This document shows positions 16,361 to 33,480 of a DNA stretch of 64,000 nucleotides, piece after piece. Origin of the DNA: Asterias rubens (lineage: Eukaryota). The position numbers and the translations under genes are program-made. The stretch lies in the NCBI RefSeq assembly GCF_902459465.1, contig NC_047075.1, positions 7,192,001 through 7,256,000 of the forward strand, written 5' to 3'. Each line of letters starts with the position of its first letter. Position 1 is the first letter of the stretch. The notes beneath the pieces are model-generated. The model worked only from the letters and a program-made list of their open reading frames with translations. It ran no database searches and had not been told where the DNA came from.

Positions 16361-17612
16361 CCTGTCCGCAAGGGCCAACCCGTTTTGCTGTCAAAGACTA
16401 TGCCCGATTGAGCGGCTATTGCATTCTTTCTGCAATTTACACTACTTCCACATGTTCTGTGTGCTACGAATCGTCTACTTTTGGACCCAAACGCTTCCAG
16501 AGATTGATATCACAAATTAATATTTACCATAGAGGTATTCAAATGTTAATTACCAAGCAGAATGTGCTGTCACGATTTATACGACGATAGTGACATGGAG
16601 TGCTTTGTGAAACCTGGTCCAATGGTGGATTTCACAAAGAGTTGAGAGTAGTCTCGAGTTATTATTATTATTAGTATTGGTATTATTATTGTTGTTTATT
16701 AAACAACAATATTAATACCAATACTAATAACAATACTACTGATGATAACAGTTAGTGTTCTCATTATTGTTGTCTTCATTATGTCTGTCTTTGTTCTAAT
16801 TGTCTGTCCGTTCGTTCTTGTCCCCGTTTATTGTCTGTCCCCAGGCATCCCTACATAAGCCTCGGCTTCCAGATGATGCCTCCATACTCTATTTTTTTTT
16901 CTCTGCTTCATCATTAAAGACACTGGGCACTATTGGTAATTGTCAAAGATCAGCCTTCTCACTTTGTGCATCTCGACATGACTGTGTACAAAATGACAAA
17001 CCTGTGAAAATTTGAACTCAAATGGTCGTCGAAGTTGCGTGATAACAATGTAAGAAAAATTAACTTTTTACTGTTCATAAACAAAGGTTTATACACACCC
17101 ATGTGACGCGCTCTCCAACAAGAGGTATTTATGAATCTACACTTACATACCGGCGAACAAATCTCCCTACTTCGGTGCAGCAGCATATTCTGTGTCCCCC
17201 CCCCCACCCACCATTTGACGATCTGTTTACAAGCTTTTTCTGATAGCACCCTCTTTTCTCAGACATGCCAACAAACTTTGCTCAGTCAAGTATAGAACCA
17301 AATTCCTTCTCTATTAAACCACAGTTGAATTTGTACTGCTAATTTTTTAAGTATATTTTTTTTTATCACTTCCCTTATTTTAATGCTTTTATTTTGTAAA
17401 TTATTGTTGTTTATTATCTTTTAAACGCAATTCAGCCCTTGGGCTGCGATGTTTGAATTTTTAACAAATATTATTAATAATAATTTGTTGATCTTATTCT
17501 TTCGGCCCAAGTCAATATCCCATTATGGGGACAGATTTCCCTGGAAAAATGGCTCTACCACACCCCTTTTAAACACGATATTCTGGTTTTGTTTTCACTT
17601 CCTGCACAACAG

Positions 17613-17898
17613 ACATCTTCAGATATGCCACCAATTAATGAGGTGACCCTGCGTAAATTGGCGGAAAACCTTCCGAACTGGGAACAAGTTGCATCTTATC
17701 TGAAAATTACAAATATTAGAGTTGGTCGACTGAAGGCGGAATGTCCCGGTAATATTGACGAGCAGATATTCCAGATGCTGCATATTTGGTATAGGCGCTT
17801 TAACCTGGCCGCAAACAGGCATCAAATGGGAGAAGAGTTAATTGACGCACTGAAACAAGTCGATGGGACGGAAGATCTGATCGCATGTTATCTATCAG
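17613..17898 (+). CDS. Death-domain exon (…TLRKLAENLPNWEQVASYLKI…EQIFQMLHIWYRRF…ELIDALKQV…)
   Basis: Pyrimidine-rich acceptor ...cctgcacaacag| and donor TCA G|gtaaat, phase 0-1. The residue pattern W-x2-V-A-x2-L ... EQ-x2-QML-x2-W ... L-x2-AL is typical of death domains. Confidence 0.8.
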
Positions 17899-18682
17899 GT
17901 AAATTAAACAATAAACTGAAGTTAGTTTGTCATTTTAATGTGCATGGACTTTTGACCTCCTGTCTGGAAATGAGCGGAAGAGACAGAGGGATGCACCCGG
18001 TGCAGTGATCTGCATAAGTTTGGGCACAAGTTGAGTTAGGTCGCTTTTATAGAGTGTAGGCTACACGACAAAGCAAAAACAACTAAAGAGCTAAATAAGA
18101 CGAGAGCTCAAGTCTGTGTCACTTGAAACACATTGTTTCGGGAACACATACCTGTTTCCTTCCTAAATTGACTGCAAAACAATTACAAAAGTAAAACTAG
18201 AACAATATACAAAAATTCCATTTACTTCAGCAACTTTATAAAGTCACAAGAGTAGTATGAGAGGCGTATCTGACCTCCTTTTTCTGAGAAGGGTCATGAC
18301 CCTCCGTCATGAGGGTCTTCGATCCACTCTAGCAGACTTTGGACCGGGTTGCTCGAGTGATGTGTAAGGGTTGTACTTATCTAAGAAAAAAAACTGTTTT
18401 GTTTTATATTAATAAGGACAAATGTTTGTTTGTTTATTTGTTTGCCTGTTTGTTTGTTTGGTTTTTGTTTTTTTGTTCTTGATTTGTTTTTAATTTGTAT
18501 AAACTAGCATGGTGAGATAAAGGAAATTAAAAAGATATTTCTCGATGCAAACAACCGTCGTTAGTAACACATTCCTTTAGTCGACAGATTTCAGTGCTAA
18601 GTGTCGGGCAAAACAAAATTTACATGATTTCATTTCAAAAGAAAAATTAATAATGTTGAATTTGAACGTAAATATAATTGTA

Positions 18683-21084: not shown

Positions 21085-24000
21085 TCACTACAGCCATGTG
21101 GTTGCCTTTTACTTTCGTCTCATAGCTATAGCGACCTCTAGGCAGCTGGACGGCTTTTTTGTCTCTGTCAAATTTTATTCTTGCCAAATCTCTCCATTCT
21201 CCATAATAATTGATATTCCTGACTGCAAGATCAACATAGACCTTCCTAACAACTTGGCGAGTCTTCTCAATAACTATGAACTCTCCCACGAGTAAGTGAC
21301 TATATTTTTGAACTGCTTTCATAATTTTGTGGAACTGCAGGCATCTCTCTACCGTTAACCAGTAGTGATATAATCTAAGCAATGATGACGTCAGTCCTGA
21401 AATACTCTGCCAAAAGTCTCACTGACATAGGAAGCAAATTGCCAAAAACCAACCTACCGCAACGAACGTGGGATATTCTGAGAGCTAATAACATAGCACA
21501 AATTAATAAGCGAGGTTGCAGAGGAGGATCTACAACACTTCGTCATATTCCAGTAGTAATGTCGCAAAGGTCCACCATTTTGAAATCTACACAAAGGAGA
21601 GGAATTGGGAACCTCATTAACATAACAACTGAGCAACCGAGGTACCATTATCAGCTACCAACTACCTTGTTATGTAATCCTCGTTCCCTCAATAACAAAG
21701 TTGATGAACTGAGCCTGATTTTGAACAATAACAAAGTGGACATTGGAGCTATCACGGAGACGTGGTTTTCACCAGACCAACCTGTGGATCAATTTAGTAT
21801 CCATGGCTACAACATTTTTTTCGCGTCCAAGAAAAGAGCGACGAGGAGGGGGTGTAGCTCTTTACACCAAAGAATGCTTGAATGTCACCTTACTTGATAA
21901 CATAGAGGTTCCTGATGACATCGAAGCAATCTGGGTTAATGTTCGGCCTCCACGCTTACCACGTTCAATTTCAAACATTGTGATTGGAACTGTTTACTAC
22001 CCTCCCAAAAGCATTATTGCTCAACCTCTGCTTGATCACATCAGTTCCACTGTTGATCAAATTCTCACACGGCAGCCTGATTCCGGCATTATTGTCATGG
22101 GTGATTTTAACCGGCTAGAACTGGACCCTCTTTTGTCAAATAACTTTATTCAAATTGTGGACAAGCCAACTCGTGAAGATGCCATTTTAGACAAGATCAT
22201 CACCAACCTATCATCATTCTACAATCCTGTAGAAATCAGCTCCCCTCTTGGTCTTAGTGATCACCGCTGTGTCATTGTCAGACCTAAAAGCCCCATCCGC
22301 AATACCAACACCAGCAAGACTCGAGTGGTACGGCCCATGAAGGACAGCGACGTGCGAGAATGTGGTTCATGGTTGAGTGACCATGATTGGTTGGAAGTAA
22401 TCAGCACGCATGACGTCACTGCAAAATGCACGGAGTTCTACGAAACCCTCAACGGTGTGCTAGACACTTACTTTCCGAAGAAATCAGTCAAAAAACACCC
22501 CACTGACAAACCATGGCTGACACCCTACATCAAATCACTCGTTGTCAAGCGTCAGCGCGCTTTCCATGGCAACCAACAATCGCTGTGGAGGTATTTCAGG
22601 AACAAGATCAATCGTGAAATCAAACTGGCCAAGAAAACACACTACACAACCAAGGTCGAGCGACTCAAGAAATCTAATCCGAGTTCATGGTTTCGTGAAG
22701 TTTGACTTATTACAACAGGCACGAGCACAAATCGCAACATCCATGTGCAGAATATTGACCCCACAGCTCACAAGGACATAGCGTCTGCTATTTGTGAAAA
22801 GTTCGCTGCAGTCGGTAACGACCTTGACCCCTTGGATACATCCTTACTGCCAGCCTACCTTCCAGCCAAACCAATCCCTCCTGTCCAACCTTGGGGGGTG
22901 CTCAAACAACTTCAGAGAATAAGCAGCACAAAGGCGAGTGGCCCCGATAATATTTCGGCTAGATTTATACGACAGTATTCTTATGAACTTTCTAAGCCAT
23001 TGACTCACATTATCAACGCCTCGTTTGCACAGCTTATCGTCCCAGCACAATGGAAGAGGGCAATTGTCGTCCCTGTGCCCAAAACTTCACCAGCCAACAT
23101 AGACAATTTGCGACATTTTTTCTTCACACACTCCATGCTAATGCTGAACTACCCAAATCTATATCGTCCATTCTTATCACTGACTTTTCTAAGGCTTTTG
23201 ATCACATCGGCCACACAATTGCAGTTTCCAAGCTCCTCAAGTTGGGAGTTCCACCACATTTAGCCGCATGGATCGGTGATTTCATCTCTAATCGTGAACA
23301 GTGCGTGAGATACCTCGATTGCTTTTCGGAATGGACCCATACTAATGCAGGTGTCCCACAAGGCACTAAGCTCGGTGCCATTATCTTCCTGGCAATCATC
23401 AATGACGCCGGTTCCAAAGAGAACAATGCAAGTATAAAACACTTCAAATATGTTGATGACATGACTGTCATTGAAACCCGTGATGCCAGTGTTGGATCCA
23501 ACCTCCCATCTGCAATAACTGATCTGGATGTTTGGTCGTCGGACAACAAAATGCAACTCAACGTGAAAACCAACCAGATCCCCTCTCATTGACTCTAAAT
23601 GACAAAACTATTACACAATGTGCAGTTATTAAGCTTTTAGGTGTTTTTATTCAAGCCGACTTAAGGTGGGACACGCATGTAGGCTCAATGATCAAGCGTG
23701 CAAATTCCCGCCTTTTCATGCTTCGTAAATTGAAGTATCATTACCTAAGCATATATGATCTTGTTGCTATACATACCTCCTTTGTGCGGCCAATTTTGGA
23801 GTACGCTGCACCCGCCTGGTCAGGTGCTTTGTCAAGTAAGCAGTGCTATGATCTGGAAAGGGTGCAAAAGCGCGCATGCAGAATTATTCTTGGCAATGAC
23901 TACGTGCGCTACTCAGACGCTCTACAATTGTGCAGTATTGAAACACTGGTATGCCGTCGTAACCACTTGTGCCAATCTTTTGCCAAAACTCTCCCTTCAT

Positions 24001-24416
24001 CAGTCCTAAAGCGCCTCTTGCCACAGAGGTATGATAGTGGGTACCAACTTAGGAACTCCGGACTTCTGGGTCAGTTTAAATGCCGAACAGAGCGCTATAG
24101 AAAGAGCTCTCTCCCTCGCCTCACACGCCTTTTTAACAACTGAATTGCAATAGAATGCAGCTTTTTATGCGCCCTTTGACTGTGCCAGCAATATTTTTTG
24201 TCCAGGTTTTTTTCCCCGCAACTTTCAGAACAATTTATTTTATACATTGTAAATATTTGTCTCTCCTTAATCAATTATTTCTTAAATAATGTGAAATAGT
24301 GTGTTTTTTTTCTTATTTTTTAATCTCTGTATATTTTCCTGTAATTCGACCTCCGGTCGCCATGGGAATTTGTTTTTAAAATAATAAACCAATTATGAAT
24401 GAATGAATGAATGAAT
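21085..24416 (+). mobile_element. Decayed CR1/L2-group non-LTR retrotransposon (APE endonuclease + reverse transcriptase)
   Basis: ORF pieces at 21382-24143 carry CNPRSLNNK and AITETWF (APE), IVMGDFN, LDKIITN, SDH, TDFSKAFD, GVPQGTKLG and YVDD (RT). AATAAA at 24383 and an (ATGA)n tail at 24395-24416. Frameshifts near 21830, 23100 and 23580 and a stop at 22703. The 5' end is approximate. Confidence 0.92.
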
Positions 24417-25317
24417 TACGCGTGTTAGGTTTTATTTGGTGTTTACATTAGTAAAACATGTTTGTCAGCTGCACCCACATCTTCCCGGACCAATCAAACG
24501 CACATGGAAAGCTTACGTCACTGCACGCTTGTCCAATGAAATAATTTTATCCAATAAGCCTTTTCGAGGTATGGTGGACACAATGCTACAACACTGTAAA
24601 GTTCTGGTAAATTTGTGCGTATTGACCATAGAAATAGAACGTATGTTATTCAGTGAAGTGCGCATTTTAGGCGATGCGGCGTTTCCACGCAAACCTAATG
24701 ACCACCAACATGGTGAGCGTGGCATCAGTCGCGGCGTGTGACGCGCGCGTATCACGTCCGCCATATCTCAAAAAGCTTATGAAATCACTGGTAATTAAAC
24801 GCGACGGTGAGCGCACACTTTTCATCATTGATCAATGACGTCTTGGGCCGAAAATCCCTTGGGTGCTTGCGCGACAAAAGACATCGACACGGCGTACCAC
24901 GCGCGTTGACGCATCTACCTTTAAGGAACCACGCGCGTCACAGGACGCATACTAAGCCCAGAGTTCTGTGGAATGTGGACGCGCAGCAGAGCGATTAACA
25001 GTATTTGGATTGCTAGGTGTGTGTGCATAATATTTTTTCTCAAGTTTATATCAAATGATGATGCTATTTATATTAACTTCAAAATAAAGAACCTATGGAC
25101 ATCAATTTGAAAAAAGGTAAGCTTTTCAATCGTTTTGACAGTAACATTTTGGTTCATTTGAAGGTGAGGGAAAATGGTTGGGTATCCACCCCCCCCCCTC
25201 CCTCAATAAGTTAATAACAATGGTAGAGAGACAGCTTTTATTCAAAAACCGAAGTTAAGATGGTAGAGAGTTGTGCTTTCTCAAGTATTTCAGTTCATGA
25301 AAAACTTGAATATTTAA

Positions 25318-26277: not shown

Positions 26278-26398
26278 AATCACAATTTGTTTACAGAACC
26301 AAATCATGTCTGTTACTTATTATCTCTGCTTTGATTAGTTAATTACTAACAGATTTGTGATAATTGATTGAATTACTTACACTACAGAAAGAGCAATT

Positions 26399-26571
26399 AT
26401 GAGGAGTTTGATTTGGTGGAGTTTGCTGTTTTGCGTCACCGTGACGTCAGTCTTTGCTAAGAAGTGTCCGACTGGTTGCAGCTGTAGAGGGCCTCCTTCA
26501 GAAAGACATACAGCTATTTGTTTCAAAGACAAGGGGCCCAGCAAGGACTTCCCTCCGTCAATTAAAACATT
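26399..26571 (+). CDS. Secreted LRR/charged-repeat protein, exon 1: signal peptide + LRRNT
   Basis: MRSLIWWSLLFCVTVTSVFA-KKCPTGCSCRG...AIC...FPPSIKTL; donor TT|gtaaga, phase 2. An upstream acceptor (ctacag|AAAG) implies a 5'UTR exon. Confidence 0.85.
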
Positions 26572-27546
26572 GTAAGAGCATTTCTAGCAAACTCAAAAAG
26601 GGGAGGGGGGGCATTACAATAGCTTGCTTGCAAGAGTGCACCACACATTAGGTGACAAGTCGTGCACCAATGTAATTATCAATTGTTTGTGAACCCACAG
26701 TCACTTTTCAACGATAACGTTTCGGAGTCATGCAATTAATAGATTGTGTAAAGATAAAATCTATCCGAACCTGGGGTGTCAGTGCTTTCAACTTTTATCA
26801 ATTTTTGGGGGGTTGACAAAAAAAAGGCATATTAATTTTGCTTGGGAATGGGAGGAGTGCCTCGAAGAAAGCGGGCAGCAGCAAGTCGGTTTGAAGAAAA
26901 AACAAATCGTGATTTTTTTCTGTGGTACTTTGCAAAAATTTCTGTTAAACGGGTTCACCTCAGACAAAATATTTTAGCATGATGGTTTAAAATTATCCTT
27001 CTATATTAAGTGTACTATCAGACAAATAACACAGCTTCACTTTAGGTCATCAATGTATGACTTCATTGTACGGTTTGGCTTAGAGATTGGCATTGTACAT
27101 CAGTTTGAAATCTTATCAAATTAATATCAATTCTATAATGTTCTTGACACTTGTCCATAATATCTTTAGAGAGCTACGTCATGTTTCTGCGGGTTCTATG
27201 CGAAGCTACATCAAACACGCACCCGATGTCACTGATCTCATGTAAGCAACACTATAGGCAATATATTTATGTCTAAGTTGAACTGGCGTGGCAGGAGATT
27301 TTTCCCAGTTACGGTAGCATCTTCTGGTAGCGCCCTCTATTGAATCCTGCTTCTCCAGCCCCTGTTTATTTCCCATGTACATGAATGTATTTCCACCATG
27401 TTTAAAATCCTATACTTATTTACATAAAATTATAAGGGCCGACATGGTGTTACTGCAAACATACTGCTATCTTCGCCATGCAAGTTTTTTTGTAGACCTT
27501 ACCACTAATGCAACATTTTATGTACGATCTATTATTTCTCATACAG

Positions 27547-27624
27547 ACTTCACGATTCTGGTTCAGGGGATGTGAAATACCTTCCTCCAGATTTCTTCCA
27601 TGGAATGAAACACATCAAAGCAAT
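27547..27624 (+). CDS. LRR protein exon 2 (LHDSGSGDVKYLPPDFFHGMKHIKAI)
   Basis: ttatttctcatacag| ... AT|gtaagt, 78 nt, phase 2-2, which is typical for single-LRR exons. Confidence 0.85.
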
Positions 27625-28147
27625 GTAAGTTGACTGGAAATAAGCTTCGATATCACTCTTAAAATTAATGAGGACAATGAAAACAACTTGTGGTTAGAAG
27701 CCTACATCAGCGTTTGATAGAATAAAGTATTTCAAGAAACGTTTCACTTCGAAGTAACGTATAGTTACGAGAACAAAAACAAAAACAAATAGCCAACAAC
27801 ACTGAATCGGACAAACATTAACTCATAACACTTCTCAGATTGCGTATTACAGTAGGGAATATTCTTCATTGAGTGGACACCTTTGGCTCCAGATTTTCGA
27901 CAATAATGTCTTAAAAAACGCGGCCGCCTTCTGAAATATTTTTTTTAAAAATATGATGTTATAGTTTTATTGTGTACTTCTGCATTTATTATTGAAAGAA
28001 ACGAACGGTTCCCTCGACCAATAATACACATACATGGCTAATTATTAGAAGAAGATCAAAACCAATAATACACATACATTGCTAATCATTAGAAGAAGAA
28101 ACTGTCCACAATGTCTAACTAAAATGTCTTATTTTCCCCTGAATCAG

Positions 28148-28228
28148 AACCTTCCAGAAGCTGAAGCACAACGTCGCCCCACATGGTCTAGCTATCGCAA
28201 TGGAGGGCCTTGGTCAACTACGATTTCT
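28148..28228 (+). CDS. LRR protein exon 3 (TFQKLKHNVAPHGLAIAMEGLGQLRFL)
   Basis: ttttcccctgaatcag| ... CT|gtaagt, 81 nt, phase 2-2. Confidence 0.8.
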
Positions 28229-28787
28229 GTAAGTTATTTTCTAGTAATAATAATTCAGTTTGTGGACCATGAGGCCTATCTACTACCTGGTTGATCGTGT
28301 CTTGTTATATTCTGCTACCACGGATATAGATGGCTTTTAACATCGCAAAGCCGATCTACATTGACACATCATCATGGCTCATGCAATGCCATCCAATCCA
28401 TATGTTTCATTCTATGTTGTTCAATCTTTCTTGTGTCACTTTGGTGTCGGTAAGCCCGTGTATTAAATTCATGTTCGAATTGACAACTGGGGCTATTATG
28501 ATGACACTCCTGACGCAGAGTCAATAACCCTGCTACACACAGATACAACAAAGCGCCAAAGCTATGATTTCAGAAATATATATGTTTTGAGATGTGTTGT
28601 CTGAGTTGAAGTGATGTGAGGTTTTTCCAAAGAGAGTGCCTGGCACGCACGGAGTGACAAAAATAGGATAAGTCTTAACCGTCAGGAAACTGAAAGAGAG
28701 GGAAGCAGTTTATTGTATAGGCTTGTAAAATGGAAAACATGTCGGGTTCTATAATGATCTTCTCTATCTTTGATTCAATCTTTTCAG

Positions 28788-28954
28788 AGATCTAACTAAG
28801 AATCGTTTGGAGTGCAGCTGTGAGCTTCTTGATTGGATAAACAGTCATCACGTGATGCTTCTAGGAGTGCCAAATCTAGCGCCCTCTACACATTGTAAAG
28901 AGGCCGGGTTTGACGAAGATACTTACACTTCGACGGAACTAATTGAACTATGCG
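28788..28954 (+). CDS. LRR protein exon 4: last LRR + LRRCT (DLTKNRLECSCELLDW...C...C)
   Basis: aatcttttcag| ... TGC G|gtaaga, 167 nt, phase 2-1; N-x-L-x-C-x-C-x-L-x2-W LRRCT pattern. Confidence 0.88.
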
Positions 28955-29024
28955 GTAAGAATGAATCTAGTTTGAACTTGAAACATACTTATCAGCTGAT
29001 TTGAGGTTTGAAGAAAGAAATATT

Positions 29025-29225
29025 GACTAGAGCAGGACTTGAACCAACGACCTTCGGATTAACGTGCCGGCGCTCTACCAACTGAGCTATCCAGCCCGTA
29101 ATTGGCGGTCTCCATATTTTCAATCTTTGTTCTAAGAGACCGCCATTAAAGATAGCTCAGTTGGTGCATGGTTGAGCGCCGGCGCGTTAATCCATATGAC
29201 ATTGGTTCAAATCACGCTCCAAGCA
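29025..29225. mobile_element. Palindromic element with two divergent tRNA-like arms; related copies at 61605-61775 (two arms) and 34372-34520 (one arm)
   Basis: Minus arm 29025-29096 reads GGCTGGATAGCTCAGTTGGTAGAGCG...GGTTCAAGTCC; plus arm 29151-29225 reads GATAGCTCAGTTGG...GGTTCAAATC. Confidence 0.7.
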
Positions 29226-29389
29226 ATGTTTCTTAGTTCAACCCTAAATCATACACAAATTTACCCAATCAGTTTCCCTTATGATTTATGATTTGATAAA
29301 TATTAATTAACTGCTAAAAATAATCATACTACAGATTATCTCGAGGAAGAGGAATTCGTTAAATCTTGAGTTAATTTGTATTACAACAG

Positions 29390-32300
29390 GAAGTTTGAAC
29401 TCGACACATGTTCATGAAGTGAAGCATGAATCGTCTGCAGATGAAATAAGCAAAGTGATGGACGAGTTTTCCAGTTCCAAGGTTGGGAAAGATGTTGATG
29501 AAGAAGACGAAGATGAGGATAAAGATGTTGATAATAATCAAGACGTTGAGAACCTTGAATCGGTAACTGGGACCAAACACACAGACAAAAATCGAGCTCT
29601 CTTCAATTGGTTGAAAAAAGACGTTGAGAAATCTGAATCAGTAACTGACTCCAAACACAAAATAAAACCTCAATCAAACACCGATTCAGAGAAAGACGAC
29701 GATGAGAAACCTGAATCAGTAACTGACTCCAAACACAAAATAAAACCTCAATCAAACACCGATTCAGAGAAAGACGACGATGAGAAACCTGAATCAGTAA
29801 CTCGCACCAAACACAAAGACAAAGCTCAATCTCTCATCGATTCGGAAAAAGAAGACGATGAGCAACCTGAATCGGTAACTGGCTCCAAACAGAAAGTCAA
29901 AGCTCAATCTCTCACCGATTCAAAGAAAGAAGACGTTGAGAAACATGAATCAGTAAATGGCTCCACACACAAAGACAAAGCTCAGTCTTTCACCGATTCG
30001 GAGAAAGAAGACGATGAGAAACCTGAATCAGTAACTGGCTCCAAACACAAAATAAACGCTCAAGCTCTCATCGATTCGGAGAAAGAAGACGACCACAAAG
30101 TCAAAGAGAATCTTGCGAATCTTGAATCGGTAACTGGGACCAAACACACAGACAAAAATCGAGCTCTCTTCAATTGGTTGAAAAAAGACGTTGAGAAATC
30201 TGAATCAGTAACTGACTCCAAACACAAAATAAAACCTCAATCAAACACCGATTCAGAGAAAGAAGACGACGAGAAACCTGAATCAGTAACTGACTCCAAA
30301 CACAAAATAAAACCTCAATCAAACACCGATTCAGAGAAAGACGACGATGAGAAATCTGAATCAGTAACTGACTCCAAACACAAAATAAAACCTCAATCAA
30401 ACACCGATTCAGAGAAAGACGACGATGAGAAACCTGAATCAGTAACTGACTCCAAACACAAAATAAAACCTCAATCAAACACCGATTCAGAGAAAGAAGA
30501 CGATGAGAAACCTGAATCAGTAACTGACTCCAAACACAAAATAAAACCTCAATCAAACACCGATTCAGAGAAAGACGACGATGAGAAACCTGAATCAGTA
30601 ACTGACTCCAAACACAAAATAAAACCTCAATCAAACACCGATTCAGAGAAAGACGACGATGAGAAATCTGAATCAGTAACTGACTCCAAACATAAAGACA
30701 AAGCTCAATCTCTTATCGATTCGGGGAAAGCAGACGATGAGCAACTTGAATCAGTAACTGGCCCCGAACACAAAATAAAAGCTCAATCTTTCACCGATTC
30801 AGAGAAAGAAGACGACGAGAAACCTGAATCGTTAACTCGCACCAAACATAAAGACAAAGCTCAATCTCTTATCGATTCGGGGAAAGCAGACGATGAGCAA
30901 CTTGAATCAGTAACTGGCCCCAAACATAAATCAAAAGCTCAATCTTTCACCGATTCAGAGAAAGAAGACGACGAGAAACCTGAATCGTTAACTCGCCCCA
31001 GACATAAAGACAAAGCTCTATCTTTTATTGATTCGGGGAAAGCAGACGGTGAGCAACCTGAATCAGTAACTGGCCCCAAACACAAAATAAAAGCTCAATC
31101 TTTCACCGATTCAGAGAAAGAAGACAACGAGAAACCTGAATCGGTAACTCGCCCCAAACATAAAGACAAAGCTCAATCTCTTATCGATTCAGAGAAAGAA
31201 GACGATGAGAAACCTGAATCGGTAACTGGCACCCAACACAAAGACAAAGCTCAAGCTCTCATCAAGTCGGAGGAAGAAGACGATGAGAAACCAGAATCGG
31301 TAACTCGCCCCAAACACAAAGACAAAGCTCAATCTCTTATCGATTCGGAGAAAGAAGACGGTGAGCAACCTCAATCAGTAACTGGCTCCAAACACAAAAT
31401 AAATGCTCAAGCTCTCATCGATTCGGAGAAAGAAGACGATAAGAAACCTGAATCGGTAACTGGCACCCAACACAAAGACAAAGCTCAAGCTCTCATCAAG
31501 TCGGAGGAAGAAGACGATGAGAAACCAGAATCGGTAACTCGCCCCAAACACAAAGACAAAGCTCAATCTCTTATCGATTCGGAGAAAGAAGACGGTGAGC
31601 AACCTGAATCAGTAACTGGCTCCAAACACAAAATAAATGCTCAAGCTCTCATCAACTCGGAGGAAGAAGACGATGAGAAACCTGAATCGGTAACTCGCCC
31701 CAAACACAAAGACAAAGCTCAATCTCTTATCGATTCGGGGAAAGCACACGATGAGCAACCTGAATCAGTAACTGGCTCCAAACACAAAATAAATGCTCAA
31801 GCTGTCATCGATTCGGAGAAAGAAGACGATGAGAAACCTGAATCGGTAACTGGCCCCAAACACAAAGACAAAGCTCAAGCGCTCATCAAGTCGGAGAAAG
31901 AAAACGTTGCGAATCTTAAATCTGAGTCAGTAACTGGCTCTGAGCAGCAAGAAAAAGTTCAATCTTTCACCGAATCTGAGAAAGAAGACGTTGAGAATCC
32001 TGAATCAGTAAATGGCTTCCAGCAGAAAGACAAAGCCCAAGCCCTCACCGATTCTGGGACTGAAGACGTTGAGAATCTTGAATCATTAATTGGCTCACAG
32101 CACCATGACAAATCAAAAGCTCTCTCCAATTCAAGGAAAACAGATTTTAAAGACCTTAAATCTGGTAGTGGTGCCCAACACAAAGACAACACTCAAACTC
32201 TCACCAAGTCAGGGGAAGATAACATTGCGAATCCAGAATCTGAAATTGACTCCCAATACCAAGCTCTCACCAATTTGGGGAAAGAAGACGTTGAGTCGAG

Positions 32301-33480
32301 CCCCGATTCAGTAACTGCCTCCCAACAGCAATACAAAGCTAAATCATTCCTCAATTCGGAGAAAGAAGACAGTCCCGATTCAGTAACTGCCTCCCAACAG
32401 CAATACAAAGCTAAATCATTCATCAATTCGGAGAAAGAAGACAGTCCCGATTCAGTAACTGCCACCCAACAGAAATACAAAGCTAAATCATTCATCAATT
32501 CGGAGAAAGAAGACAGTCCCGATTCAGTAACTGCCTCCCAACAGCAATACAAAGCTAAACCATTTACCAACTCGGGGAAAGAAGACGTTGAAAGTCCCGA
32601 AACAAGAACTGTCTTTAAACACCAACCCAAAACTGAAGCTCTCACCAGTTCGGAGAAGGAAGACTTTGCGAATCCTGAATCAGTAACTGGCTCCAAACAC
32701 CAAGAAAAAGCTCAATCTCTCACCAAGTCTAGGAAAAAAGACTTTGAAAACCCTGAATCTGGAAGTGGTTCCCAACAACAAGACGTATCTAAAGCTATTA
32801 CCAATTTCGTGAAAGAAGTGAGAGTGACAGTCACAACAGCACCCGAATCAAGAGGAGAACTATTTCAGGAAATCCATCCTCATCTGAAAAAAGACGGACA
32901 ATTTTTGCAGTCGGAATTTGAACGAATAGAAGAATATCGCAAAAGGTTATTGTCACTCCTTGACGAACATCGAATGACACCAACGTATTCGACACCGGAA
33001 TATTCTAGTCCGACCAAGATTGATACCGTGGTATCGAATAATGACATCGTTGAACCAGTCACCACACAAGAAACACTATCACCCGATGATAATGAAGTTA
33101 TCGATTACTACGATGCTGACATGGAGTCGATTCTCACGACCATGAAAACAATAACCACAACGCAACCTTCTGACAAGAACCCATCCAAAGTGTCTGAGGA
33201 GACACTAGAAGTAACTTCAGATCCAGACAATATGGCAACTTTCTCCTCACCACATACCAAAAACTCTAAAGATAAATCTACTGAGAAATTGAAAGCAGAG
33301 CAGAAATCCCACAACGATTCTAGACATTTGTTTCTAGAGCGATCCCCAAGCGGCGATTTCGGTTCATCGATTCTTGACAGCCCGATCGATATCCGATTAC
33401 ATCCGATCGATCCAGTAGAACTGAAGTTACTCATCAAGTATCTACAAAATGTTTCTGATGTCCAGAAAGCTGAGGACTAG
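29390..33480 (+). CDS. LRR protein terminal exon: about 1363 aa low-complexity Asp/Glu/Lys/Ser-rich repeat region
   Basis: tttgtattacaacag|GA AGT TTG is in phase with exon 4 and open for 4091 nt to TAG. The joined CDS is 4590 nt (1529 aa). Confidence 0.88.
29545..32790 (+). repeat. Coding minisatellite, 78-bp (26-aa) unit, roughly 40 copies, with a 72-bp sub-array near 32300-32570
   Basis: ESVTDSKHKIKPQSNTDSEKDDDEKP and variants; GAATCAGT occurs at 29635 and 29713. Confidence 0.92.

What the first reader, a model, noticed from the sequence alone, without database searches (positions are those of the whole stretch)
26399..33480. Unrecognised secreted protein: mini LRR head on a 1300-aa block-polyampholyte tail
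Seen: signal peptide, LRRNT, about 3 LRRs and LRRCT on four small exons, then one 4.1-kb exon with roughly 40 copies of a 26-aa unit. The unit alternates a basic patch (KHKIK) and an acidic patch (DSEKDDDE), with 8 D/E, 5 K, 1 H and 6 S/T in the purest form. A Thr/Ser-rich stretch and a short unique C-terminus follow. I see no Cys in the tail, no TM segment and no GPI signal. Automated ORF calling misses the head. I do not recognise the architecture. Inference: a disordered, charge-patterned extracellular protein, with candidate roles in biomineral matrix, adhesive or cuticle, or coacervation; the LRR head would provide specific binding.
Basis: partly seen in the sequence, partly recalled or inferred. 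Interest (0 to 1): 0.78.

Follow-up and report, generated by a model that had tools for sequence, protein, structure and literature searches.

The report
Secreted LRR protein, long charged tail
A sea-star gene, shown here to be spliced and transcribed, encodes a secreted protein with a very small leucine-rich-repeat binding head, a roughly 1,100-residue disordered tail of about 42 charged 26-residue repeats and a conserved end piece; it matches no known family and its role is still inferred, not shown.

Summary
The feature is real. Window 26399-33480 (+) is the coding part of a seven-exon gene. RNA contigs from a sister species join every predicted junction with GT..AG and leave the introns uncovered.

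- a 72-nt in-frame exon (27170-27241) encoding one more LRR;
- a 5'UTR exon ending at 25116.

The product is 1,553 aa, in this order:
- signal peptide;
- LRRNT, four LRRs and LRRCT, holding all eight mature Cys;
- an acidic linker;
- about 42 units of 26 aa;
- a Ser/Thr/Pro-rich stretch;
- a 45-residue end that is the best conserved part between species.

The tail is a strong polyampholyte (41% charged, pI 5.0) and is predicted disordered. Its charges are only weakly segregated: kappa and SCD equal shuffled values. "Block" is therefore overstated.

No relative of the tail, linker or C-terminus was found, apart from two ORF fragments on one unnamed ENA contig.

I read it as a lineage-specific extracellular tether or spacer. 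The biomineral, adhesive and coacervate ideas have no support. The tissue is unknown, and the spliced head could not be folded or put through Pfam. The scan has noted other orphan secreted repeat proteins in this genome.

The parts
24994..25116 (+). 5' untranslated exon. The start is approximate (at least 123 nt seen in RNA). It holds an in-frame upstream ATG at 25095 that would add 11 residues before the signal peptide. Donor GT at 25117.
   Evidence: The loose end of an X1 RNA contig before 26386 matches 25087-25116 with one mismatch.
26386..26571 (+). First coding exon: acceptor AG at 26384-85, ATG at 26399, signal peptide, LRRNT four-Cys cap and the start of LRR1. Ends in phase 2.
   Evidence: RNA contigs cover 26386-26569, and a joint 26571->27170 has GT..AG ends. 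Atlas features: best cluster is LRRNT, PF01462, score 0.88 with 173 shared features. Hydropathy.
27170..27241 (+).
   Evidence: X1 joints 26571->27170 and 27241->27547, both GT..AG; depth 45-133 here against 0 in the flanking intron bins. The frame is kept.
27547..27624 (+). 78-nt LRR exon (phase 2-2).
   Evidence: A single 623-nt X1 contig joins 27547-27624, 28148-28228, 28788-28953 and 29389-29620.
28148..28228 (+). 81-nt LRR exon (phase 2-2).
   Evidence: The same 623-nt contig; joints 27624->28148 and 28228->28788 are GT..AG.
28788..28954 (+). Exon with the last, canonical LRR (LDLTKNRL) and the four-Cys LRRCT cap.
   Evidence: Joint 28953->29389 (cut +1), GT..AG, with 166 letters on the shorter side. 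All ten best named Atlas clusters are LRR families (Slit, VLR-B), scores about 0.80.
29390..29556 (+). Start of the large exon: unique acidic linker (34% D/E), with an N-x-S/T sequon at residue 194.
   Evidence: Covered by the 623-nt RNA contig up to 29620; composition.
29557..32820 (+). Array of about 42 units of 26 aa (four of 24 aa); consensus ESVTGSKHKDKAQSLIDSEKEDDEKP. It contains young internal duplications: units 9-14 are 96-100% identical, and a 234-nt block is duplicated exactly.
   Evidence: AlphaFold2 on seven units gave mean pLDDT 56, pTM 0.20, mostly coil. Mean hydropathy 0.32 is below the Uversky boundary of 0.44.
32821..33300 (+). Unique region: a predicted long helix (around FLQSEFERIEEYRKRLLSLL), a Ser/Thr/Pro-rich stretch, and a conserved acidic Tyr motif (IDYYDxD).
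   Evidence: 34% identity to P0002, with conserved islands. Helix at model residues 49-92 with pLDDT up to 75.
33301..33480 (+). Conserved C-terminal module (core RLHPIDPVEL, then an amphipathic helix) and the TAG stop at 33478-33480.
   Evidence: 58% identity to P0001 over 59 residues, including ten invariant residues in a row. Predicted helix at model residues 239-259. The 3' end is held by RNA-type runs X1 and X4, and by X5-X8 at 0.91-1.00 of the sampled words.

Best explanation
This is a real, expressed sea-star gene restricted to this lineage. It encodes a secreted extracellular protein of about 171 kDa before modification, built from three functional parts.

1. A minimal disulfide-capped LRR module (LRRNT, four LRRs, LRRCT; about 170 residues) that serves as the specific binding head.
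2. About 1,100 residues of periodic, well-mixed polyampholyte repeats. At sea-water ionic strength these should behave as an expanded, strongly hydrated random coil.
3. A conserved C-terminal part, with a helix, an acidic di-tyrosine motif (a candidate sulfation site) and a terminal amphipathic helix, that offers a second interaction site.

The most likely mode of action is a long flexible tether or spacer in an extracellular matrix, coat or secretion. The two ordered ends hold partners, and the repeat array sets distance, hydration and ion or metal buffering (one His, about five Lys and about eight Asp/Glu per unit).

Shown here: the gene structure, splicing, transcription, the domain order, the composition, and the absence of known relatives. 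Inferred: secretion, disorder, binding by the head and by the C-terminus, and the tether role.
For: Gene and RNA:
- All six junctions have GT..AG ends and are joined in RNA contigs of run X1. Unique intron bins have depth 0.
- Coding pieces differ from the sister species at 10 of 557 positions (1.8%). Intron pieces in DNA run X3 differ at about 3.6%.
- There is a single open frame of 4,091 nt.

Head:
- The signal core is the only hydrophobic segment.
- Cys occurs only in the two caps.
- The first coding exon maps to an LRRNT cluster (0.88, 173 features). The cap exon maps to Slit and VLR LRR clusters.
- The LRR exons of 72, 78 and 81 nt are all phase 2-2, the usual cassette layout for LRR genes.

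Tail:
- Fraction of charged residues 0.41, net charge per residue -0.07, pI 5.0, kappa 0.147, which equals the shuffled value.
- Uversky hydropathy is below the boundary, and the AlphaFold2 model is low-confidence coil.
- Several unit positions are nearly invariant (E1 S2 V3 T4 H8 K9 K11 Q13 S18 K20 D22 E24) although dN/dS between units is about 0.77.

C-terminus:
- It is the only part with relatives among 1.84 billion representatives. The last 59 residues are 58% identical, while the preceding 160 are 34% identical.
Against: - No tissue, protein-level or binding data exist.
- The spliced head could not be submitted to Pfam or AlphaFold, because no reference exists for a spliced protein. Pfam and PDB sequence searches on single exons found no LRR family. 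Only the last LRR fits the LxxLxLxxN consensus well.
- Four of the five codons seen to differ from the sister species change the amino acid (five of the six changed positions), so the head and linker may be under weak constraint.
- Run X5, which holds the 3' end completely, showed no cover of the 5' exons. A shorter 3' transcript or a 3'-biased library cannot be told apart.
- The related ENA contig has no long ORF called in the 2.2 kb upstream of the conserved end, so the repeat array may not be shared. That contig's DNA could not be read.
Confidence: 0.55

Rival explanations
1. Skeletal (stereom) matrix protein. The acidic repeats would bind calcium or calcite and control mineral growth, and the LRR head would dock to the organic matrix.
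For: The protein is net acidic (pI 5.0, 24% D/E in the repeats), secreted, repetitive and fast-evolving, as many matrix proteins are (background in PMC5460417).
Against: The Patiria miniata skeletal proteome is reported to have no proteins with acidic repetitive regions (PMC5460417). The tail also carries 17% K/R, so it is a polyampholyte rather than a polyanion. Only 6 S-x-E sites fall in the 1,088 repeat residues, so it is a poor substrate for the secretory-pathway casein-kinase type. There is no expression evidence.
Confidence: 0.08
2. Component of an adhesive, mucus or other released secretion (tube-foot footprint or epidermal mucus). It would condense with oppositely charged partners or with itself by coacervation.
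For: It is large, secreted, disordered, charged, and has one His per unit. The same genome holds other orphan secreted repeat proteins, some strongly basic and some strongly acidic (scan notes s1-175462 and s1-150256; not tested here). Word depth in run X1 is fairly high at 200-400.
Against: The main text of the Asterias rubens catalogue of footprint proteins never mentions LRR or leucine; the footprint proteins made only by one adhesive cell type are described there as Cys-rich (PMC9382459). Charge blocks are not more segregated than random, and sea-water salt screens polyampholyte attraction. Aromatic residues make up 2% of the repeats, so there are few stickers.
Confidence: 0.15
3. Cargo or packaging protein of regulated secretory granules (granin-like). 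It would have conserved ends and a variable acidic middle, with His and carboxylates driving pH- and Ca-dependent condensation in the granule and swelling on release.
For: The ends are conserved and the acidic, disordered middle diverges fast. There is one His in nearly every unit (31 of 34) and a C-terminal amphipathic helix.
Against: There is no sequence relation to granins. Dibasic processing sites are few: KK 7, RK 3, KR 1. LRR caps are not a granin feature.
Confidence: 0.07
4. Gamete or egg-coat protein. The LRR head or the C-terminus would take part in species-specific recognition, and the repeat array would evolve quickly.
For: Most of the observed coding differences from the sister species change the amino acid. 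The array has young duplications. Such patterns are common in reproductive proteins (general knowledge).
Against: There is no expression evidence and no resemblance to known echinoderm gamete proteins. The sample of substitutions is tiny (six sites).
Confidence: 0.07
5. A gene on the way to decay, or a transcribed repeat expansion with no function for the tail. The open frame would persist only because an open 78-nt unit was copied.
For: dN/dS between units is about 0.77, and there is no excess of third-position variation. No relatives of the tail were found.
Against: The frame stays open through degenerate units and through 240 unique residues to a C-terminus conserved in another species. About a dozen unit positions are nearly invariant. 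The transcript is spliced and well covered in RNA.
Confidence: 0.08

Closest known systems
Small leucine-rich repeat proteins with charged extensions (asporin poly-Asp, osteomodulin/osteoadherin acidic tail, PRELP basic tail)
   Same: They are secreted matrix proteins with a Cys-capped LRR domain that binds a partner, plus a low-complexity charged extension that binds mineral or glycosaminoglycan. Decorin, mimecan, lumican and keratocan clusters appear among the Atlas feature neighbours of the first coding exon.
   Different: Those proteins have 10-12 LRRs, a different N-cap Cys spacing and an 'ear' C-cap, and extensions of tens of residues. This one has four LRRs, C-x3-C-x-C-x11-C, a canonical LRRCT-type cap and a tail of about 1,350 residues. 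A review states that echinoderms lack decorin (PMC10381214).
Platelet glycoprotein Ib alpha (GP1BA)
   Same: Both have an LRRNT-LRR-LRRCT head, an acidic tyrosine motif and a long repetitive disordered stalk that holds the head away from its anchor (my own knowledge of GP1BA).
   Different: GP1BA has a transmembrane anchor, a Pro/Thr-rich O-glycosylated mucin stalk and seven LRRs. Here there is no TM segment, the stalk is a Lys/Asp/Glu/Ser polyampholyte, and the acidic Tyr motif lies after the stalk.
Lamprey variable lymphocyte receptors, LRRC3-type mini-LRR proteins and Slit LRR units
   Same: They have a very short capped LRR solenoid (LRRNT, a few LRRs, LRRCT) followed by a Thr/Pro-rich stalk. 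VLR-B and Slit clusters are the nearest feature neighbours of the cap exon.
   Different: Scores of about 0.8 are leads only. There is no GPI signal or TM anchor, no sign of somatic assembly, and no comparable repeat tail in those families.
Plant leucine-rich repeat extensins (LRX)
   Same: The architecture and logic match: a secreted LRR head that binds a ligand, fused to a long repetitive structural tail that sits in the extracellular matrix (my own knowledge).
   Different: LRX proteins have an unrelated plant-type LRR and Ser-Pro(n) hydroxyproline-rich tails that are covalently cross-linked. This is an analogy only.
Alternating acidic/basic repeat proteins (Nopp140, treacle) and granins
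   Same: They share the composition: repeated acidic Ser-rich and Lys-rich patches in a long disordered chain.
   Different: Nopp140 and treacle are nuclear and lack a signal peptide and LRR. Granins lack LRR caps. No sequence similarity was detected.

Membership tests
Extracellular capped LRR proteins (LRRNT PF01462 / LRR / LRRCT PF01463) | N-terminal signal peptide | tested here: met
   A hydrophobic core at residues 3-21 (KD 1.52) is followed by V-F-A before KKCP. No other hydrophobic segment exists. No dedicated signal-peptide predictor was available.
Extracellular capped LRR proteins (LRRNT PF01462 / LRR / LRRCT PF01463) | LRRNT four-Cys cap (CPxxCxC ... C) | tested here: inconclusive
   CPTGCSC then C41 is read directly from the sequence. 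The best Atlas cluster is LRRNT, 0.88 with 173 features. Pfam hmmscan of the exon alone gave no LRRNT hit at E<=1.
Extracellular capped LRR proteins (LRRNT PF01462 / LRR / LRRCT PF01463) | Tandem LxxLxLxxN repeats of 20-29 residues | tested here: inconclusive
   There are four units of 24-27 residues, one per phase-2 exon. Only the last (LRFLDLTKNRL) is canonical; the others have S, V or L at the Asn position. Pfam found no hit on single exons.
Extracellular capped LRR proteins (LRRNT PF01462 / LRR / LRRCT PF01463) | LRRCT four-Cys cap (NxLxCxCxLxxW ... C ... C) | tested here: inconclusive
   The motif is present once in the window. The ten best named Atlas clusters are all LRR families. There was no Pfam or PDB sequence hit for the 55-residue exon.
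Extracellular capped LRR proteins (LRRNT PF01462 / LRR / LRRCT PF01463) | Curved solenoid fold of the whole head | not tested
The step was left out.
Small leucine-rich proteoglycans (SLRP) | 10-12 LRRs with a class-specific N-terminal Cys cluster and an ear-repeat C-cap | tested here: not met
   The head has four LRRs, Cys spacing C-x3-C-x-C-x11-C and an LRRCT-type C-cap.
GP1BA-like membrane LRR-mucin receptors | Transmembrane anchor after the stalk | tested here: not met
   The maximum 19-residue hydropathy in the tail is 0.51, and the C-terminus is hydrophilic.
Block polyampholytes (high charge segregation) | Kappa or SCD clearly beyond random mixing | tested here: not met
   Kappa is 0.147 against 0.150 +/- 0.011. 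SCD is 40.8 against 42.2 +/- 3.5. Only a 1.3-fold excess of net-charge variance appears at 8-10 residues.
Mucins | Pro/Thr/Ser-rich tandem repeats (usually over 30-40% S+T with Pro) | tested here: not met
   The repeats have 20% S+T and 4.5% P. Only the unique stretch after the repeats is Ser/Thr/Pro-rich. The mucin-like Atlas neighbours of the C-terminus score 0.66 or less.

The most novel reading that the evidence does not exclude
The protein is an interfibrillar cross-bridge of echinoderm mutable collagenous tissue. The mini-LRR head would bind collagen fibrils, as vertebrate small LRR proteins do. The conserved C-terminal helix would pair molecules. The His/Lys/Asp/Glu polyampholyte array would change extension or self-association when juxtaligamental cells alter local ions or pH. 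That would give a sequence-defined candidate for one of the soluble stiffening or plasticising factors so far known mainly as biochemical activities (described in PMC10817530).
Probability: 0.05. Interest if true: 0.8.

Novelty: new variant of a known kind. Interest (0 to 1): 0.4.

Why it matters
If the reading holds, this is an animal example of an extreme architecture: a minimal capped LRR binder on a tail of more than 1,300 residues, about 1,100 of them a sequence-periodic polyampholyte. It appears to be unannotated in the protein collections searched here.

It would be a clean natural model for how well-mixed polyampholyte chains behave at sea-water salt. It is also a candidate structural or regulatory matrix component in an animal group whose connective-tissue and secretion proteins are still poorly catalogued.

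The immediate practical value is a corrected, RNA-supported seven-exon gene model. This includes a 72-nt LRR exon that is easy to miss. The analysis also shows that the conserved parts are the two ends, not the array.

Tried and rejected
Sequence and family searches:
- Pfam on each exon translation and on the tail gave no family.
- PDB sequence search with the LRRNT and LRRCT exons gave only chance antibody hits.
- Three word-indexed protein searches (C-terminal region, linker, whole tail) gave nothing at E<=0.001.
- An exhaustive HMMER search with the C-terminal 260 residues gave two true fragments (P0001, P0002) and two low-complexity hits, P0003 and P0004 (P0004 is a deer-mouse uncharacterised protein).
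- The ENA contig carrying the fragments could not be read because the sample file is too large.
- Two metagenome scans with C-terminal patterns gave no relatives.
- tblastn of the head, units and C-terminus against the rest of the window found no paralogue.

Other attempts:
- Aligning the single LRR exons to build a profile failed, because they are too divergent.
- AlphaFold2 without an alignment, on the C-terminus and on seven units, gave low confidence and was not used for fold searches.
- Literature searches on sea-star adhesion, skeleton, MCT and LRR caps found no description of such a protein.

Readings rejected:
- Neuropeptide or prohormone precursor: hardly any dibasic sites, and no Gly-Lys-Arg pattern was noticed on reading the units (not counted).
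- Membrane receptor: no TM segment.
- Classical mucin: composition does not fit.

Step left out: folding and family scanning of the spliced head, because no reference exists for a spliced protein.

Full report
**What is in the sequence**

On the + strand, an ATG at 26399 opens a hydrophobic leader. A run of short exons follows, and then a 4,091-nt exon (29390-33480). That exon is open in one frame only: a single terminal stop, against 38-126 stops in the other five frames.

It had four small exons plus the large one, all with canonical GT/AG ends, and translated without a stop to 1,529 residues.

**RNA evidence and the corrected gene model**

Three runs hold the 5' part and eleven hold the 3' end. 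I laid four runs on 26300-29620.

Run X1 is an RNA-type run from a sister species; pieces are 1-2% different. It covers the exons at word depth 120-400 and leaves the unique intron bins at 0.

- One 623-nt contig joins 27547-27624, 28148-28228, 28788-28953 and 29389-29620. Every skipped part has GT..AG ends.
- The same run shows two joints I had not predicted: 26571->27170 and 27241->27547, both GT..AG. They define an extra 72-nt exon (27170-27241). It keeps phase 2 and adds 24 residues, which is one more LRR.
- A further contig ends at 26386 with 123 unmatched letters upstream. Their end matches 25087-25116, which is followed by GT. So there is a 5'UTR exon. It contains an ATG at 25095 in frame with 26399, which would add 11 polar residues ahead of the leader.

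The final model has seven exons and gives a 1,553-residue product counted from 26399.

Runs X2 and X3 cover introns and behave like DNA.

Run X5 holds every sampled word of the 3' end. In the 5' stretch it covered nothing except repeated elements. A 3'-biased library or a shorter transcript could both explain this.

**The head**

All eight Cys residues of the mature protein lie in two clusters:
- C23, C27, C29 and C41, in a CPxxCxC...C pattern;
- C144, C146, C171 and C190, following NRLECSCELLDW.

These are the patterns of LRRNT and LRRCT caps.

Between the caps lie four units of 24-27 residues, essentially one per exon. The exons are 72, 78 and 81 nt, all phase 2-2. Only the last unit is a textbook LxxLxLxxN repeat.

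Test results for the head:
- Pfam and PDB sequence searches on single exons found nothing.
- Language-model features place the first coding exon next to an LRRNT cluster (0.88, 173 shared features). That is a range in which the tool reports that most same-family hits fall.
- The cap exon is placed next to Slit and VLR-B LRR clusters at about 0.80, which is a lead only.
- Mean hydropathy of the head lies on the folded side of the Uversky boundary.

The LRR assignment therefore rests on motifs, exon structure and feature neighbours, not on a profile or a model.

**The tail**

After a 56-residue acidic linker come about 42 units, mostly of 26 residues, with four of 24.

Twelve positions are nearly invariant: E1 S2 V3 T4 H8 K9 K11 Q13 S18 K20 D22 E24. 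Overall, however, dN/dS between units is about 0.77 and third codon positions are not more variable than first positions. Selection seems to act on a few positions and on composition.

The array is young in places. Units 9-14 are 96-100% identical at the DNA level, and one three-unit block of 234 nt is duplicated exactly.

Composition of the repeats:
- 17% K+R, 24% D+E, 3.4% H, 20% S+T, 2% aromatic;
- fraction of charged residues 0.41;
- net charge per residue -0.07;
- pI 5.0.

- Kappa is 0.147 against 0.150 +/- 0.011 for shuffles.
- SCD is 40.8 against 42.2 +/- 3.5.
- Net-charge variance exceeds shuffles only 1.3-fold at 8-10 residues.
- At 26 residues it is three times lower than shuffles, because every unit carries the same charge.

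This is a periodic, well-mixed strong polyampholyte, not a blocky one.

By the known behaviour of such chains, and given that echinoderm body fluids have sea-water ionic strength, I expect an expanded hydrated coil rather than a coacervate. This is inference. AlphaFold2 on seven units gave mean pLDDT 56 and mostly coil, and hydropathy is far on the disordered side.

**The C-terminus**

The last 220 residues are unique.

An exhaustive HMMER search of 1.84 billion representatives found only two real matches. P0002 (157 aa) and P0001 (59 aa) are adjacent ORFs in different frames on one 11.3-kb ENA contig.

Identity is 34% over the first 160 residues. Conserved islands there include FL-SE, LLSLL and IDYYDxD-SILTT. 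Identity is 58% over the last 59 residues, including ten invariant residues in a row (RLHPIDPVEL).

AlphaFold2 predicts a long helix over the first island and a terminal helix, both at modest confidence, with coil between them.

The ends of the protein are thus the conserved parts. The acidic di-tyrosine motif looks like a tyrosine-sulfation site. That is inference from the known consensus and was not tested.

**Relatives and literature**

No relative of the tail, the linker or the C-terminus exists among proteins of 0.55-1.75 times the query length in the 5.8-billion collection. The window has no paralogue, and two metagenome scans found none. The gene seems to be unannotated in these collections.

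Papers:
- The main text of the Asterias rubens catalogue of footprint proteins never uses the words LRR or leucine (PMC9382459).
- The Patiria miniata skeletal proteome is reported to lack acidic repetitive proteins (PMC5460417).
- A review states that echinoderms lack decorin (PMC10381214).
- Several soluble effectors of mutable collagenous tissue are described as biochemical activities (PMC10817530).

None of these describes this protein. The negatives are weak.

Other notes of this scan report further orphan secreted repeat proteins in the same genome, some basic and some acidic Ser-Gly. So this class of gene is not unique here. I did not test those notes.

**Interpretation**

- I am confident that this is a real, spliced, transcribed gene (about 0.95).
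- I am fairly confident that it encodes a secreted mini-LRR protein with a disordered polyampholyte tail (about 0.85).
- The tether or spacer mechanism is my best inference from the anatomy: two conserved ordered ends holding partners, with a hydrated coil in between (about 0.3 on its own).
- Rivals are an adhesive or mucus component, a mineral matrix protein, a granin-like granule cargo, a gamete coat protein, or a decaying repeat expansion. Each is weaker, but none is excluded without tissue data.

**Verdict**

I class it as a new variant of a known kind: a secreted capped LRR protein with a charged extension, taken to an extreme. Interest is moderate.

Noticed in passing
window 29024-29096 (-), with an inverted partner at about 29150-29248 (+): The last intron holds a tRNA-Asn(GTT) gene (ARAGORN; Rfam 49 bits). 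Next to it is a degenerate inverted copy, forming an 80-nt inverted repeat that is 78% complementary. Word depth here is 10^3 to 10^5 times that of the flanks in all four runs, so this is a very high-copy tRNA or tRNA-derived element.
   Followed up: partly
window 25056-25116 (+): The 5'UTR exon has a short upstream ORF (ATGATGATG... TAA). It also has an ATG at 25095 in frame with the main start, which would give an alternative N-terminus 11 residues longer. The ATG is also present in the sister species' RNA.
   Followed up: partly
window 26441: One sister-species RNA contig carries an in-frame 3-nt insertion (TGA) inside the signal-peptide coding part, and a second contig lacks it. This looks like an allelic length variant of the leader.
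   Followed up: no
window 21382-24143 (+): A frame-shifted LINE-type retroelement lies upstream of the gene: an endonuclease-RT match (E 2.9e-05, below the Pfam cut-off) and an RVT_1 match (E 7.7e-16).
   Followed up: partly
window 17589-18008 (+): A 139-residue ORF carries a Death domain (PF00531, E 2.6e-05, 24.7 bits against a cut-off of 22.6). It is probably an exon of an unexamined gene.
   Followed up: partly
window 27632-27860 and 28520-28630: These intron stretches have raised depth in all DNA-like runs and in X5, so they are probably dispersed repeats.
   Followed up: no
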